Shown: positions 53,177 through 58,292 of the stretch, piece by piece
How positions within the stretch are numbered: position 1 is the stretch's first letter
How the letters are laid out: each line of letters starts with the position of its first letter
Assembly (NCBI GenBank): GCA_907165135.1
Contig: OU015569.1
Coordinates: 11,594,001 to 11,658,000 of the forward strand
DNA length: 64,000 nucleotides
Reading direction: 5' to 3'
Origin: Oikopleura dioica
Lineage: Eukaryota; Animalia; Chordata
Made by a program: the position numbers and the translations under genes
Notes under the pieces: model-generated
The model's input: only the letters and a program-made list of their open reading frames with translations
The model's database searches: none
What the model was told of the DNA's origin: nothing

Positions 53177-53376
53177 TAACGAAACGCGACGCGGAGCTGA
53201 CAAGGCTGCTTTTCAGACAGTGCTTGCGTAGGCGGCGCCCTCCTGTGACGTCTCGTCAAAATTCTCTACTTTCGTTTCTTGTGATAATGAAAGATAGCTT
53301 TATTGGTTGATAAATTATCAATGATAATCGATAAAATGAGCAGTTTTCCAAGGAAGACAAAATTTAGTTCATTTGT

Positions 53377-53392
53377 GGCCCTTAAAAGGGCC
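53377..53392 (-). terminator. Histone 3' stem-loop
   Basis: GGCCCTTTTAAGGGCC on the minus strand, about 30 nt after the H2A stop. Confidence 0.9.
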
Positions 53393-53421
53393 GGTTTTGA
53401 AGGAGCATCGAAAAGATGCCC

Positions 53422-53781
53422 TTAGTTCTTCTTGGGAAGGAGAACTGGGTTGATGTGGGGGAGGACACCACCCTGGGCGATGGTCACTCCGTCGCAGAGT
53501 TTCACCAGCTCTTCGTCGGTCTGGATGGCGAGCTGAAGATGTCGGGGGTTGATTCGACTCTTCTTGTTCTCCTTGGCGAAGTTGCCAGCGAGTTCGACGA
53601 CCTCGGCGGTGAGGTACTCGAGGACGGCGGCCAAGTAGACGGGAGCACCGGCGCCGACGCGGTCAGCCCAGTTGCCCTTGCGGAGCATTCGGTGCACTCG
53701 GCCGACGGGGAAGGCGAGTCCAGCTCGGGATGAGCGGGTCTTCTTGGCGGCAGCGTTAGTCTTGGCTTTTCGTCCGGACAT
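53422..53781 (-). CDS. H2A: Divergent histone H2A (119 aa, short C-tail), copy 1
   Basis: Intronless [52 protein letters not shown]; TATA-like box upstream and stem-loop downstream. Confidence 0.95.
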
Positions 53782-54077
53782 CCTTTCGTTTTCTCGGTAA
53801 AGTGAGAATGAGCAGTTTCGCGATTTCGGGCTCCTTATATACGCGTTGCTGGGAAGAACAACAGCCAGCTCTAGAGACTTTTTTCTCCAAAGCGCGAAAA
53901 AAAACAACAAGGATGCTCTGGAATGCTCAGCAAAAGGAGAAAAATGACGAGAAAGTCCATAATTTCAGGAATAGGCTATCGATTTCACTAATGACACTGT
54001 CATTATGACAGCGAAGAGCTGTTGATTCTAGTTTAGTTGTAAATTTTGACACTTCTGAAATATCAAGTTTAATTTAT

Positions 54078-57054
54078 TTAATTCGAAAAGAATTCTTTTG
54101 GCATTCGCGCAGGTAACTTGAAAGTAAGAGTGATAGAGTATGCTTGAGACAGAAGATACCATTTTTCCATTTCCATATTGAATTGTTCGTTCACTAAAGC
54201 TAAGAACTCGTTGTTTGGTCCAAAGTATATGAAATCATTGAAAGTGTTAAAACAGTCGGCAGTCATCTCGTAAGGAGCGTAGTATTCACGACAAAGAGGG
54301 ATTCTGACTTGAGAGCCAGAATGGTCGATCAAAGTGTTTTGGAGGATGTATTCGGAGTTTTCGATTCGGTCGACAACCATTTGGTGGAAAATTATTGATC
54401 CATCGGGATTCAGATAGGCGCCGGTTACAGTCAGGGGGCGGCTGAAGATGAAGTTTTGGTGGAGGAGAACTGAATATTGAATTTATTTCAAAAGACTTTT
54501 TGTAAAATTAAACCTCGTTGAAAATCGAATTCTGATAATTTAATCGGGCTATGGTGACAGATAATTTGCCATCCACTCTCATTCAAATAAGTTCTGAATT
54601 TCATTCTTCTGAGAAGCAATTCAATTTCATTATCTTGAAATTTCTGTTCTTCTTTTTTTGGATTGAGATTGAATCCAGCAAAACTACGCGGATAAACAAC
54701 CATTGTCAAAATGGTGAAGATATTTTCGAGAGAAAAATACTCTTCGAAAAGCGAGAGTCTCATTTCACCCACTTTCAAATCATTCATGACCGCCCATCGA
54801 AGAAGAACGCTGACTGAAAGCGGGACACACAGATTGCTTTCTTTTTGATTTAAAACGTTCGTCGTCACATTTTTAAAATCATAATTAATCTCCCTTGTAA
54901 GTTTTTGTTTGAGATTGGCCATTGCGGAAGATTTTGTCAGATTTGGATCGTCCAGGCAGAAGTCAGAAGACGCGCTTTCCAATGAGATGATTTTCGTCAT
55001 TTGCTTTATTTCTTGAATCTTCGGAGGACGTGCCTTCAGATATCCTAACCAGTTTGCATTTGCAGCCTTAAGATTATGATTTTTTATTACAATGAAGAAA
55101 ATACCTCCAGTGATCTTCTTATCTCTTCCTCGCCGTTATCGATCGGGTTATATAGAAGACTCCATGCTGTCTTCCATTCAGACAGCACGAAAATGTAAAT
55201 TAAATACAGGTTGTTAAGAACATCATAATTGTGGCAAAGTTGTTCTGTTCTTGCAAAGCCTGCAGAACCAGCATCTAAAATAGAGTATTCTTAGATAGGC
55301 TATCTAAGATAGTCTCTCAGAAACAAATTCCAAACTATAAATACAATTTCATCTCAGCTTGACTCAAGATTATGTAGACTTACAAAGGTATTGAAAATGT
55401 CTAAACTTCCCTCCACTTCTTGCGTAGCCCATTTCTTGGTAGCTCTTCCTTTCACTTTTGTTATCAACAATCCCAAAATCAATCCATTTCGCTTTTCCGA
55501 GTGCCACTCGGCGAGTGGTCTCCGTTTGCCCAAATCGCCATTTGCCTAAGATCTCCGTTTGCCCAACTTGAGGAAAAGGCGACTTGGGCAAACGGCGATG
55601 TGATTTAATTAAAATTGATTGACCAAATAACTTTATTTTATTGGCTTCTCCACACTCAATCCCGGCTTCAACAACTTCTATCCTAGCTTTTCAGAGGTCA
55701 ATCCTTGTGACTAAAACTTCAATCCTGGCATCTCCAGCGTCAATCCCGGATTCTTTAACGCCGATCCGGGCGTCACTAACATCAATTCTAGCTTCTCATA
55801 CGTCAGTCCCGACTTCTCAGTTGTCAATCATGGCGTCTCGAAAGTCAATCATGGCTTCTCAAAGATTGGAATGACGTTGGAAAAGCGGCTTTTCAAAAGC
55901 CTAGATTGAAATTGATGAAGCCGGGATGGACGTCGAAGACCCCGGGATTGACATCAGAGAAGCCATGATTGAAGTCGGTGAAGCCAGGATTGACGATGTA
56001 GAGACCAGAATTGACGATGGAGAAGCAATGATTGATTTAATATCAGTGATATTGGAGAAGTTATGAGATCTCCGTTTCCCCAAGTTGGGTGAACGGCGAT
56101 TTGGGGAAACGGCGACTTGGGCAAACGGAGACCACTCCCCTTTTCCATTTTTCAAAAGAATATTTTCTGGTTTTTTATCGTGATGATCAATTCCAATTTT
56201 CCTTAAATAATCTTCCCCTTCTATAACTCCAATTACAATTTTCTTCCTTTCTTCCAAATTCAAATTTCCGTCTTTCAACATGCTTCTCAAATCAGAGTCG
56301 CACTTTTCCATAATTGTTATCCATCCAATACAGTCCTCTTTATCAACATCGTCGTTTGAAAAAACTTCAATGTTAACGTAATTTTTGATGATATTCGTAT
56401 GAAAGGGGAATACAATCTTCATTTCCATCCCGACTATGCGCAATTCGGTAATCTAAATCGCAAGATATGAAATGCAATTAATCAAATTATTTATATAATA
56501 TAACCTTTTGAAAGATGAATTTCAAATTTATATTCTTCATTATTTGTGGTAAACAATGCGGAGTCAAACGCCTGAACCCGAACAGCAACATCTAGGTCTC
56601 CAAATTTTTCATTCAGTACGAATGCTTCTCCTCCTGATGATATTATTTTATCACGAAGAGACTGATGAAGAATCCATTCTCCAGTTTCCGCTTTTAATTC
56701 TGACCGTTGAGTTATTCTGCCGCTAAAGGTTGGGTTTCTTTTCAGAATTTTCTTTTGAAACAAGGTCATTTGTTTTGTCTGCAATATCTTATTTGATATT
56801 CGAGGAACGAAAATTATTTTTAATATGTCATCCTTAAAAATAATCTCCTTCCATCCAGCACAATCTTTACTGTTGAACTCCATTCTCTCGACCGACAAGA
56901 TCAATCTGTCCAGATCATCTCTGCTTGTAGTTCTTGTCAATTTCTTTGTGAAATCTTGCAGCCATGACTCGATTGCTTCTCTCGTTAGCTCTTTCGGATG
57001 CGTTAAAATTTTTAAGTTCAACAACCTTGAAGCATAATCTCTGAATTTATCCAT
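54078..57054 (-). pseudogene. Kinase-like + papain-fold cysteine protease fusion gene, disrupted in this copy
   Basis: ISSGGEA, VAVR, IMEKCD, HHDKKPENILL, WIDFG, GSAGFARTEQ; then NQKESNLCVP, FHQMVVD, YILQNT. It has GT-AG introns, a +1 frameshift at ~56403 and an element insertion between NG|K and AKWIDFG. Confidence 0.75.
55499..56139. mobile_element. 641-bp foldback element with inverted 21-bp arrays and 7-bp TSD
   Basis: TIR GAGTGGTCTCCGTTTGCCCAA; CTTTTCC duplicated at 55492-55498 and 56140-56146; TCAATC(C/A)TGGCTTCTC-type 21-mers face each other; excision restores KNGKAKWIDFG. Confidence 0.88.
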
Positions 57055-57220
57055 AATTAATAGAACGTAACTTCAATTATGAATAAATTTGACAATTACA
57101 ACTACCAAACTCCAAGGCGATCAATAGACAATGGCAGCTTAATTCAAATAAAATTATAAAAGAGGAGGAAATCTTTCAATGCTCAGCGAGCAGTTTCTCA
57201 AAATGTTCTTTGTAATTTGT

Positions 57221-57236
57221 GGCCCTTAAAAGGGCC
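57221..57236 (-). terminator. Histone 3' stem-loop
   Basis: GGCCCTTTTAAGGGCC on the minus strand, downstream of H2A copy 2. Confidence 0.9.
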
Positions 57237-57265
57237 GGTTTTGAAGGAGCATCAAAAAGATGTCC

Positions 57266-57628
57266 TTAGTTCCTCTTCATGGGAAGGAGAACTGGGTTGA
57301 TGTGGGGGAGGACACCACCCTGGGCGATGGTGACTCCGTCGCAGAGTTTCACGAGCTCTTCGTCGTTCTGGATGGCGAGCTGAAGATGTCGTGGGTTTAT
57401 TCTTGTCTTCTTGTTTTCCTTGGCTGCGTTGCCAGCGAGCTCGACGACCTCGGCGGTGAGGTACTCGAGGACAGCAGCCAAGTAGACGGGAGCACCGGCG
57501 CCGACGCGGTCAGCCCAGTTGCCCTTGCGGAGCATTCGGTGCACTCGGCCGACGGGGAAGGCGAGTCCAGCTCGGGATGAGCGGGTCTTCTTGGCGGCAG
57601 CGTTTGTCTTCGCTTTTCGTCCGGACAT
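57266..57628 (-). CDS. H2A: Divergent histone H2A (120 aa, short C-tail), copy 2
   Basis: Intronless H2A fold ending LLPMKRN*, transcribed divergently from H2B. Confidence 0.95.
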
Positions 57629-57953
57629 GTTTTCGTTTTCTCGGCAAAGTGAGAATGAGCAGTTTCGCGATTTCGGGCTCCTTATATAGGCGTTGCTGGG
57701 AAGAACAACAGCCAGCTCTAGAGACTTTTTCTCCAGAGCGCGAGAAAAACAACAACGAGCTCTGGAATGCACGGAAAGAAAAACAAATTTTCTCGAAATC
57801 GTGCTTCGAGAACATGTTGTTTTTGTTATTGAAAATCGCGGCGAAGGGTTGTCTCCCGCACGAACATCCTCAAGGCCGGATTTTCTATAAATACGCGGCG
57901 AAAACGCAGTTGCTCACCACTCACAAACTTGCAAAACTTGTGAAACAGCAAAA
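57629..57953. promoter_or_regulatory. Bidirectional H2A/H2B promoter
   Basis: Head-to-head genes; TATA-like CTATATAAG on the minus strand at ~57681-57689 and TATAAAT at ~57886. Confidence 0.75.
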
Positions 57954-58292
57954 ATGGCCAAGACCAACGCCAAGCCCGCCGCCGCCAACACCAGAAAATA
58001 CCGAAAGGCCCGAAAGGAGTCCTTCGCTATTTACATCTACAAGGTCTTGAAGCAGGTCCACCCCGACCAGGGCATCTCTTCGAGAGCCATGTCCATCATG
58101 AACTCGTTCGTGAGCGACATCTTCGACCGAGTCAGTGGCGAAGCTTCCCGCCTTGCCAAGATCAACAAGAAGTCGACCATCTCCTCCCGGGAGATCCAGA
58201 CTGCTTGCAGACTCCTCTTCCCCGGAGAGCTTTCCAAGCACGCCGTCTCCGAAGGTACTAAAGCTGTGGCTAAGTACAACGCTGCTAAGTAA
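57954..58292 (+). CDS. H2B: Divergent histone H2B (112 aa, short N-tail)
   Basis: [70 protein letters not shown]. Confidence 0.95.

What the first reader, a model, noticed from the sequence alone, without database searches (positions are those of the whole stretch)
53922..57187. Kinase + papain-fold protease fusion gene in a 3.25-kb block flanked by 10-bp direct repeats between duplicated H2A genes
Seen: after removing the internal element and a 1-nt frameshift, the minus-strand gene encodes an N-terminal domain, an atypical kinase (VAVR for VAIK, HHDKKPEN, DFG) and a C-terminal region with NQxxxxLCVP (Cys ~54828), FHQMVV (His ~54385) and YILQNT. AATGCTCAGC flanks the block at the points where the two H2A copies stop aligning. 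Established: Gln/Cys, then His, then Asn in that order is the papain (clan CA) active-site layout, and 9-11 bp TSDs are typical of Mutator-type insertion. Inference: an intron-bearing kinase-protease module that moved as DNA without its own transposase or TIRs, possibly a lineage-specific mobile effector (defence or signalling) family.
Basis: partly seen in the sequence, partly recalled or inferred. Interest (0 to 1): 0.78.

Follow-up and report, generated by a model that had tools for sequence, protein, structure and literature searches.

The report
Kinase–papain protease gene between H2A copies
This is one, possibly decaying, copy of a family of more than 130 Oikopleura dioica genes that fuse an unusual protein kinase to an unannotated papain-fold cysteine protease; the 10-bp repeats around it are real, but nothing shows that the family is mobile.

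Summary
The window comes from the Oikopleura dioica OKI2018_I69 assembly, a tunicate.

**Observation: confirmed.**
- AATGCTCAGC lies at 53922-53931 and 57178-57187.
- These are the edges of two H2A units that are about 94% identical.
- Between them is a minus-strand gene with six exons.
- The gene carries a 648-nt MITE insertion and a +1 shift in a C-run at 56407-56410.

**Kinase plus papain-fold protease: supported.**
- Paralogue models fold as a protein kinase (pLDDT 83.5; every listed Foldseek row is a protein kinase).
- The C-terminal domain folds as a papain-like peptidase: all 50 listed rows of the structure search are papain-like cysteine peptidases, best Z 9.1.
- Gln-x5-Cys and His-x15-Asn are kept in 94-99% of paralogues.
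- The protease domain matches no Pfam or PDB sequence.
- The kinase has Arg in place of the beta-3 Lys in 43 of 43 copies.

**Mobile-module reading: weak.**
- The block has no terminal inverted repeats, and its ends are unique in the genome.
- Paralogues share only coding sequence.
- Flanking repeats in 39 paralogues match chance controls.
- The nearest paralogue is far more diverged than the two H2A copies.
- Insertion into a tandem H2A pair and microhomology-mediated duplication of H2A across a resident gene remain about equally likely.

The scan had already found this family on other DNA of the same genome.

The parts
53338..53926 (-). H2A unit, copy 1: 3' hairpin, CDS 53425-53781, stop 53422-53424, and 145 bp of promoter. 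It has no H2B partner.
   Evidence: Pfam Histone plus Histone_H2A_C. It is 94% identical to copy 2.
53922..53931 (.). Left copy of the direct repeat AATGCTCAGC. Its first 5 bases are also the end of the H2A-unit homology.
53932..57177 (-). The 3246-bp block: one kinase-protease gene with 146 bp of 3' flank and 123 bp of 5' flank.
   Evidence: The flanks are unique in the genome. There are no terminal inverted repeats.
54078..54469 (-). Exon 6: second half of the papain-fold domain. His codon 54386-54384, Asn codon 54338-54336, stop 54078-54080.
   Evidence: The paralogue model places the His on a beta strand and the Asn at the end of the next strand.
54514..55066 (-). Exon 5: linker plus first half of the papain-fold domain. 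The Gln-x5-Cys motif has its Cys codon at 54829-54827.
   Evidence: Peptidase_C1_2, E 0.038. At least 136 matches in the own genome. Conservation.
55105..55274 (-). Exon 4: C-lobe of the kinase.
   Evidence: Frame and GT..AG borders read. Paralogue homology.
55384..55491 (-). Exon 2/3, part 3' of the MITE, holding the DFG motif.
55492..56139 (.). MITE plus one copy of its GGAAAAG duplication: 648 nt, a multiple of 3. On the minus strand it starts GG and ends AG. It is a possible non-canonical intron.
   Evidence: Inverted repeats of 40 nt, 88% complementary. At least 40 dispersed copies at 72-81% identity. Removing it is in frame and restores the paralogue-like sequence.
56140..56452 (-). Exon 2, part 5' of the MITE: hinge and catalytic loop HHDKKPEN. 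The +1 shift is in the C-run at 56407-56410.
   Evidence: Pfam Pkinase, E 1.5e-6. Frame comparison with paralogues.
56505..57054 (-). Exon 1: N-terminal domain, Gly-rich loop and beta-3 strand with VAVR (Arg in place of Lys).
   Evidence: Arg in 43 of 43 paralogue copies.
57178..57187 (.). Right copy of the direct repeat AATGCTCAGC.
57188..57771 (-). H2A unit, copy 2: CDS 57269-57628, stop 57266-57268. It shares a divergent promoter with H2B.
57954..58292 (+). H2B gene, the divergent partner of H2A copy 2.
   Evidence: Pfam Histone, E 6e-19.

Best explanation
The block is one member of a multigene family that named records show only in Oikopleura dioica, with at least 136 exon-5 matches in this 64-Mb genome.

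**The protein (cytosolic, no signal peptide seen).**
- An N-terminal domain of about 130 residues comes first.
- Next is a divergent eukaryotic-type protein kinase. It keeps the Gly-rich loop, the HxDxKxxN catalytic loop and DFG, but always has Arg where the ATP-binding beta-3 Lys should be.
- Last is a papain-fold cysteine-peptidase domain of about 250 residues with a Gln/Cys/His/Asn catalytic set.

**Inferred mechanism.** The protease half is an active thiol peptidase, because its four catalytic positions are under strong purifying selection across paralogues. The kinase half is an atypical or regulatory kinase that targets or gates it.

**This copy** is a singleton on a long branch. It carries a MITE inside the kinase exon, removable in frame as a GG..AG intron, and a +1 shift in a homopolymer. 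It is either decaying or carries an assembly error.

**Locus history.** The gene lies between two young H2A copies (about 6% diverged), bounded by an exact 10-bp repeat. This is the scar of a single DNA-level rearrangement and not the signature of a transposon family. I cannot tell whether the gene was dropped into an H2A tandem or H2A was copied across a resident gene by microhomology-driven template switching.
For: **Organism.** Named homologues are O. dioica proteins. One sits on a contig of 16,158,756 bp, the length of G000:C5. The assembly size of 64.3 Mb in 19 scaffolds and the scaffold lengths match PMC8008620.

**Family size.** 136 matches to exon 5, many in local clusters 2-6 kb apart. 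Copies group by location in the tree.

**Kinase.**
- Pfam Pkinase: 56.1 bits for L033 and 44.9 bits for L031, above the cutoff of 31.7.
- AF2 model pLDDT 83.5, pTM 0.84.
- At least 500 Foldseek matches at E<=0.001, and every listed row is a protein kinase.
- Motif census: Arg in 43 of 43 copies, HxDxKxxN in 71, DFG in 62.

**Protease.**
- AF2 model of a read-through paralogue ORF that is 69% identical to the window's exon 5: pLDDT 73.9, pTM 0.72. Cys78 starts helix 78-93, His224 lies in strand 221-232, and Asn240 follows strand 235-239.
- The unbiased structure search of 48,161 chains lists 50 rows, and all are papain-like cysteine peptidases. The best are xylellain (Z 9.1, 161 residues, rmsd 3.2), cathepsin B (8.4) and Der p 1 (8.4).
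- Weak Foldseek rows are enriched in the same fold.
- Language-model features point to Peptidase_C1 clusters.
- Pfam Peptidase_C1_2 hits the Cys motif at E 0.038.
- Conservation: Gln 68/69, Cys 65/69 (the other 4 are Ser), His 53/54, Asn 53/54.

**Rearrangement.** AATG sits at all four ends of the two H2A units. O. dioica lacks classical end joining and repairs breaks by the alternative pathway (PMC6635534, read).
Against: - Catalytic activity is untested for both domains.
- The Arg at beta-3 may make the kinase a pseudokinase.
- The structure-search Z values (7-9) are in the range the tool calls middling. The argument rests on the uniformity of the list and on the motif spacing.
- I could not measure the Cys-His distance, because model coordinates are not exposed.
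- The fold was predicted on paralogues that carry a short read-through intron, not on the window's own spliced protein.
- The second half of the protease alignment had only 11-17 rows.
- The locus history is not resolved. An exact, non-repetitive 10-mer at both edges is what a target-site duplication looks like.
Confidence: 0.8

Rival explanations
1. Insertion with a target-site duplication. Two H2A units were once adjacent, joined as ...GGAATGCTCAGC-GAGCAG.... The 3.25-kb gene then integrated there as DNA and duplicated 10 bp. The agent was a Mutator-like transposase acting in trans, or another staggered-cut mechanism.
For: - The 10-bp repeat is exact and not low-complexity, and it sits at the edges of the block.
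- Homology of the H2A copies ends there, and nothing aligns beyond.
- The introns are retained, so the move was at the DNA level.
- An earlier, unchecked scan note reports a Pack-MULE inside another H2A/H2B promoter of this genome.
Against: - No terminal inverted repeats: 7 of 30 bases match in register, and the local alignment score is no better than shuffles.
- Both ends are unique in the genome.
- There is no donor. The nearest paralogue is 74% identical in exon 5, and the window copy sits on a branch of 0.43 changes per site, while the H2A copies differ by only about 6%. This model needs cut-and-paste or loss of the donor.
- The insertion would have to fall exactly on the junction of a tandem duplication.
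- 5 bp (TCAGC) at that junction remain unexplained.
- Paralogues show no excess of flanking repeats.
Confidence: 0.4
2. Resident gene with a recent H2A duplication. The kinase-protease gene has long sat 3' of the H2A/H2B pair. A replication or repair template switch using AATG(C) microhomology copied the 0.59-kb H2A unit to the other side of the gene. The repeated 10-mer is a junction by-product.
For: - It explains why the H2A copies are young (93-94% identical even in the promoter) while the gene has no close relative.
- AATG lies at all four ends of the H2A units, and copy 1 sits between AATG and CTCAGC.
- The species relies on microhomology-type end joining (PMC6635534).
- Family growth is mostly local duplication.
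Against: No single two-switch path that I could write reproduces the observed order exactly. The model needs either a 10-mer already present on both sides of the gene or a further 7-bp loss. It does not by itself explain the duplicated CTCAGC.
Confidence: 0.4
3. The family is a self-propagating mobile gene module: a transposon or part of a larger element that carries the kinase-protease gene as cargo or as its own machinery.
For: - More than 130 copies lie on four large scaffolds.
- Some sister copies are on different chromosomes: C1 5.97 Mb groups with C4 1.49 Mb at 99% SH-aLRT support.
- Gene length is uniform, at about 2.2 kb.
Against: - Nucleotide similarity among 74 paralogue loci stops at the start and stop codons.
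- There is no excess of flanking repeats.
- Neighbours are unrelated host genes: EGF proteins, a dynein heavy chain and a USP8-interacting protein.
- Most relatives are local tandem copies.
- No transposase or integrase domain is present in the protein.
Confidence: 0.1

Closest known systems
Papain family (MEROPS C1, clan CA): papain, cathepsin B, Der p 1, xylellain, bleomycin hydrolase
   Same: The catalytic order Gln, Cys, His, Asn is the same. The spacings Gln-x5-Cys and His-x15-Asn, and about 132 residues from Cys to His, equal papain's Gln19/Cys25 and His159/Asn175 (papain numbers from my own knowledge). The Cys starts the central helix, and the His and Asn sit on neighbouring strands. 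These are the best structural matches.
   Different: There is no sequence-level membership. Pfam gives only E 0.038 for one exon and nothing for the paralogues. A PDB profile search finds nothing. No signal peptide or classical prodomain was seen. The domain is fused behind a kinase, and four paralogues have Ser in place of Cys.
Eukaryotic protein kinases with an Arg or other residue at the beta-3 Lys position (KSR-type, WNK-type atypical kinases or pseudokinases)
   Same: The fold is a protein kinase with a catalytic loop Asp/Lys/Asn and DFG. KSR is among the weak PDB sequence matches.
   Different: It fits no kinase group. The best PDB E-values are about 1e-6 and cover the catalytic-loop region only. 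The family has its own N-terminal domain and a C-terminal protease.
Pack-MULE / Mutator-like non-autonomous elements
   Same: The flanking duplication is 10 bp long. The cargo is a host-type gene with introns. The position is next to a histone promoter.
   Different: There are no terminal inverted repeats, the ends are single-copy, and no family of copies shares those ends.
Introner-like MITE insertions (applies to the internal element only)
   Same: It is a multi-copy element with terminal inverted repeats inside an exon. The element plus one duplication copy is a multiple of 3, and it is bounded by GG..AG. In OKI2018_I69, 11% of introns are not GT/AG (PMC8008620).
   Different: Splicing of this copy is not shown.

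Membership tests
Papain-like cysteine peptidase fold (clan CA) | Nucleophile Cys at the N-terminus of a helix, followed in sequence by a His on a beta strand and an Asn or Asp, with a Gln before the Cys for the oxyanion hole | tested here: met
   Gln72, Cys78 (starts helix 78-93), His224 (in strand 221-232) and Asn240 (after strand 235-239) in the L009 model. The same residues are in window exons 5 and 6. They are kept in 94-99% of paralogues.
Papain-like cysteine peptidase fold (clan CA) | Three-dimensional similarity to solved members | tested here: met
   All 50 listed rows of the VIA-align wide search are papain-like cysteine peptidases. Best Z is 9.1 (161 residues, rmsd 3.2), and 6 chains reach Z>=8. 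Foldseek alone is weak, with best relevant E 0.097.
Papain-like cysteine peptidase fold (clan CA) | Cys and His side chains within catalytic distance | not testable with these tools
   Model coordinates are not exposed to scripts.
Pfam Peptidase_C1 / Peptidase_C1_2 (sequence family) | Score above the family's gathering threshold | tested here: not met
   13.2 bits against a cutoff of 22 for window exon 5. No hit for the 313-aa and 404-aa paralogue ORFs. No PDB sequence hit.
Eukaryotic protein kinase (Pfam PF00069) | Score above the gathering threshold, and a kinase fold | tested here: met
   Paralogues score 56.1 and 44.9 bits against a cutoff of 31.7. The window's exon fragment scores 28.2 bits. 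The model has pLDDT 83.5, and every listed Foldseek row is a kinase.
Eukaryotic protein kinase (catalytically competent) | Beta-3 Lys (VAIK), catalytic-loop Asp and Asn, DFG Asp | tested here: inconclusive
   The Lys is replaced by Arg in 43 of 43 copies. HxDxKxxN is kept in 71 ORFs and DFG in 62. Activity cannot be judged from sequence.
Mutator-like / Pack-MULE element | Target-site duplication of 9-11 bp | tested here: met
   A 10-bp exact repeat lies at both edges.
Mutator-like / Pack-MULE element | Terminal inverted repeats | tested here: not met
   The local alignment of the left 300 bp against the reverse complement of the right 300 bp scores no better than shuffles. 7 of 30 bases match in register.
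Mutator-like / Pack-MULE element | Several copies that share their ends | tested here: not met
   Each end matches only itself in the genome. Paralogues share coding sequence only.
Processed retrocopy | Loss of introns and a poly(A) tract at the 3' end | tested here: not met
   Five introns are retained (four GT..AG, plus the MITE if it is spliced). There is no A-run at the 3' end of the gene strand.
MITE (the internal element) | Terminal inverted repeats, flanking duplication, many non-coding copies | tested here: met
   40-nt inverted repeats, 88% complementary. GGAAAAG lies on both sides. At least 40 dispersed copies at 72-81% identity.

The most novel reading that the evidence does not exclude
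The chordate O. dioica lacks classical end joining. In it, an intron-bearing host gene may have been inserted as DNA with a clean 10-bp flanking duplication and without inverted repeats. That would be a transposase-independent, or trans-mobilised, route of gene dispersal. This route may have helped spread a lineage-specific arsenal of more than 130 kinase-protease proteins, which could serve as a home-grown defence or signalling system in an animal that has lost much of the usual immune repertoire.
Probability: 0.12. Interest if true: 0.75.

Novelty: new variant of a known kind. Interest (0 to 1): 0.45.

Why it matters
The protease half is a papain-fold domain that neither Pfam nor PDB sequence searches recognise. 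It is fused to a kinase whose ATP-binding Lys is always Arg, and it has been amplified to more than 130 copies in one of the smallest animal genomes. I found no paper on it in the library searched.

If both halves are active, this is a new architecture that couples phosphorylation and proteolysis, and it is easy to test biochemically.

The H2A-gene-H2A arrangement with an exact 10-bp repeat is a dated natural experiment on how genes are inserted or duplicated in a genome that repairs breaks without classical end joining. Comparison with the other sequenced O. dioica populations would settle which event happened.

Tried and rejected
- **Nematode origin.** This was my first guess from the histone hairpins and short introns. 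I rejected it once the homologues were named O. dioica.
- **Word-index protein search.** The Cys half of L031 gave nothing.
- **Exhaustive HMMER search.** It gave 150 hits, nearly all short Oikopleura or marine-metagenome fragments. Two long hits, P0116 (unnamed, from a marine metagenome assembly) and P0126 (Chitinophaga), are repeat artefacts without the Cys.
- **First alignment, A1.** Mixing the exon-5 and exon-6 rows misaligned the motif YPRSLAGxNLNP onto RPLTVTGAYLNP. I discarded it for folding and built A3 instead.
- **Profile search of PDB sequences.** It returned only chance hits.
- **Metagenome scan for an empty H2A-H2A junction.** It returned two unrelated bacterial contigs.
- **Homology beyond the 10-mers.** None.
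- **Terminal inverted repeats.** None.
- **Flanking repeats in paralogues.** Same distribution as controls.
- **Retrocopy.** Rejected, because the introns are kept.
- **Spliced protein.** I never joined the window's spliced protein for a search or a fold. Exons were searched one by one by reference, and paralogue ORFs that read through a short intron stood in for it. Only for the tree were the two exon translations of each copy concatenated, inside a script.
Full report
**Where the window comes from.** The own-genome search places the window at G000:C2:11594001-11658000 of a 64,281,565-bp assembly in 19 contigs. Homologues found by the exhaustive protein search are named Oikopleura dioica proteins. 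These include CBY13560.1, CBY31701.1 and CBY31442.1. Another, CAG5114306.1, is labelled OKI2018_I69 chr2 and sits on a contig of 16,158,756 bp, which is exactly the length of G000:C5. The OKI2018_I69 paper gives 64.3 Mb in 19 scaffolds. It also gives arm coordinates that end at 14,533,022, 16,158,756 and 17,092,476, and these are the lengths of C4, C5 and C1 (PMC8008620). So this is the Okinawan O. dioica, a tunicate. By elimination, C2 (12.96 Mb) is one of the sex-specific scaffolds; that step is an inference.

**The observation.**
- AATGCTCAGC is at 53922-53931 and 57178-57187.
- Both flanking minus-strand genes are H2A. Copy 2 shares a divergent promoter with an H2B gene at 57954-58292.
- The two H2A units are 94.2% identical in the CDS, 93.1% in 145 bp of 5'UTR and promoter, and 96% around the 3' hairpin.
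- Copy 1 stops aligning after AATGC, which is inside the left 10-mer.
- Copy 2 starts either directly after the right 10-mer, at the shared GAGCAGTTT, or 27 bp further in by BLAST.
- Nothing aligns beyond the 10-mers.
- A 10-bp match somewhere within 250-bp flanks is not rare: 17.7% of 1560 unrelated flank pairs have one. The position of this repeat, not its length, makes it non-random.

**Gene model (minus strand).**
- Exon 1 is 57054-56505.
- A 52-nt GT..AG intron follows.
- The next exon runs 56452-55384 and is interrupted by a MITE.
- A 109-nt intron follows, then exon 4 (55274-55105).
- A 38-nt intron follows, then exon 5 (55066-54514).
- A 44-nt intron follows, then exon 6 (54469-54078).

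The MITE has 40-nt terminal inverted repeats, GGAAAAG on both sides, and at least 40 dispersed copies at 72-81% identity. The element plus one duplication copy is 648 nt (55492-56139), a multiple of three. It begins GG and ends AG on the gene strand. Removing it gives ...NILLKNGKAKWIDFG..., which matches the paralogues. In this assembly 11% of introns are not GT/AG, so it may be spliced out. That is an inference.

After the 52-nt intron the paralogue-like reading (DY.IA...IP) is in one frame and FH.N.IKN continues in the next. The switch lies in a CCCC run at 56407-56410. It could be a true lesion or a homopolymer error of a Nanopore-based assembly. A 71-nt intron ending at 56434 would also restore the frame.

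**The protein: kinase.**
- The window's own exon gives Pkinase at E 1.5e-6, below threshold because it is a fragment.
- Near-intronless paralogues score 56.1 and 44.9 bits against a cutoff of 31.7.
- An AF2 model of L033:2630-3799, built with 121 paralogue rows, has pLDDT 83.5 and pTM 0.84.
- Foldseek counts at least 500 matches at E<=0.001, and every listed row is a protein kinase, none of one particular group.
- Across the 75 loci, the beta-3 position is Arg in 43 of 43 detected copies. HxDxKxxN (71 ORFs) and DFG (62 ORFs) are kept.
- So this is an atypical kinase or a pseudokinase.
- The first ~115 residues form a confident separate N-terminal module. I did not characterise it.

**The protein: papain-fold domain.** Pfam, a PDB sequence search and a PDB profile search do not recognise it. 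Because the catalytic Cys and His lie in different exons, I looked for paralogues whose short intron is open in frame. I found five.

I folded L009:1108-2046:-, which is 69% identical to the window's exon 5. The alignment had 85 rows: the five read-through ORFs, twelve spanning database proteins and the exon-5 rows. The model has pLDDT 73.9 and pTM 0.72. Cys78 starts helix 78-93, His224 lies in strand 221-232, and Asn240 follows strand 235-239.

- Foldseek gave only weak rows, but many were papain-like: AvrPphB, PCAT1, mexicain, AvrRpt2 and staphopain-type folds.
- The search that does not depend on Foldseek covered 48,161 chains. Its 50 listed rows are all papain-like cysteine peptidases. It was led by xylellain (Z 9.1, 161 residues, rmsd 3.2), cathepsin B (8.4), Der p 1 (8.4) and Der f 1 (8.3).
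- Z values of 7-9 alone are middling by the tool's own note. The uniformity of the list is the argument.
- The spacings Gln-x5-Cys, His-x15-Asn and about 132 residues from Cys to His equal papain's (papain numbers from my own knowledge).
- Language-model features also point to Peptidase_C1 clusters.
- Among paralogues, Gln is kept in 68/69, Cys in 65/69 (the other four are Ser), His in 53/54 and Asn in 53/54. This is what selection on catalysis looks like.
- I could not measure the Cys-His distance.

**The family.**
- Exon 5 has 136 matches in the genome, on C1, C2, C4 and C5 and two small contigs. Many are spaced 2-6 kb apart.
- The exhaustive search of 1.84 billion representatives found 150 hits. 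The ones I looked up that carry a name are O. dioica, apart from P0126; the rest are unnamed marine-metagenome fragments. Two long outliers, P0116 and P0126 (Chitinophaga), are repeat artefacts.
- Three literature searches found no description of the family.
- Two earlier follow-ups in this scan reached the same reading on other DNA of this genome.

**Is it mobile?**
- Nucleotide similarity between the block and 74 paralogue loci begins at the stop codon and ends at the start codon.
- The 146-bp and 123-bp flanks match nothing else in the genome.
- There are no terminal inverted repeats.
- In 39 paralogues with enough flank, the longest direct repeat between flanks is distributed as in 1560 mismatched controls: 15% against 17.7% reach 10 bp.
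- Neighbours are unrelated host genes: EGF-domain proteins, a dynein heavy chain and a USP8-interacting protein. One Exo_endo_phos ORF is also present.
- In a quick tree, copies group by location. The window copy is an unresolved singleton on a long branch of 0.43 changes per site, against a median of 0.25.
- So the family grows mainly by local duplication and shows no transposon hallmarks.

**What made the H2A-gene-H2A arrangement.** Two readings survive.

(a) *Insertion.* The gene was inserted at the junction of two adjacent H2A units, with a 10-bp duplication.
- For: the exact repeat at sharp homology edges.
- Against: no donor exists. The nearest paralogue is 74% identical in exon 5, yet the H2A copies differ by only about 6%. 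The insertion would have to post-date the H2A duplication and leave no source. It would also have to hit the junction exactly, and 5 junction bases remain unexplained.

(b) *H2A duplication.* The gene is an old resident, and the 0.59-kb H2A unit was recently copied across it by template switching.
- For: it fits the age contrast. AATG lies at all four ends of the H2A units, and copy 1 sits between AATG and CTCAGC. The species relies on alternative end joining (PMC6635534).
- Against: I could not write a two-switch path that reproduces the order without an extra 7-bp loss or a pre-existing 10-mer on both sides.

I rate them about equal. A scan of metagenome contigs for the empty junction gave only chance bacterial hits.

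**Limits.**
The window's exons were searched one by one, and paralogue read-through ORFs stood in for it.
- Only the tree used concatenated exon translations, inside a script.

**Verdict.** The kinase plus papain-fold reading is supported. The mobile-module reading is not supported for the family and is unresolved for this one locus.

Noticed in passing
window 55492-56139: A MITE lies inside the kinase exon. With one copy of its GGAAAAG duplication it is 648 nt, a multiple of 3, and it is bounded by GG..AG on the gene strand. It is a candidate transposon-derived non-canonical intron. A short palindrome (CCGAGTG C CACTCGG) sits at its low-coordinate end in the window (about 55498-55512).
   Followed up: partly
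window 53335-53346, 53807-53818, 57654-57665: The 12-mer AATGAGCAGTTT occurs three times: in the 5'UTR of both H2A copies, near the expected transcription start, and again just beyond the 3' end of H2A copy 1. Copy 2 has GAGCAGTTT at the matching place. The reason is unexplained.
   Followed up: no
L009:1108-2046:- residues 119-131 and 205-217 (the same motifs are in window exons 5 and 6): Two similar motifs, YPRSLAGxNLNP in the first half and RPLTVTGAYLNP in the second half of the protease domain, are alike enough to make MAFFT align the two exons on each other. They may be an internal repeat or a convergent loop.
   Followed up: no
paralogue exon-5 rows of alignment A3: Four of 69 paralogues have Ser in place of the catalytic Cys, while the surrounding motif is kept.
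   Followed up: no
G000, table: No exon-5 match falls on contig C3. The copies concentrate at C1 15.4-16.6 Mb, C1 5.5-6.0 Mb and C2 11.0-12.7 Mb, and are scattered on C4 and C5.
   Followed up: no
L008:2512-3207:-: An ORF with an Exo_endo_phos domain (E 8e-6) lies just downstream of one paralogue. It may be a fragment of a LINE-type element.
   Followed up: no
P0119 (CAG5114306.1) and P0006: One annotated protein joins a truncated family member to a DnaJ-like C-terminus. One metagenome-derived protein holds the second half of the protease domain twice in tandem. These are likely merged gene models or local duplications.
   Followed up: no
window 53338-58292 compared with G000:C2:9.60-9.73 Mb: The window's H2A is only 80-81% identical in DNA to five H2A genes clustered about 2 Mb away. 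So this H2A/H2B pair is a diverged outlier of the histone set.
   Followed up: no
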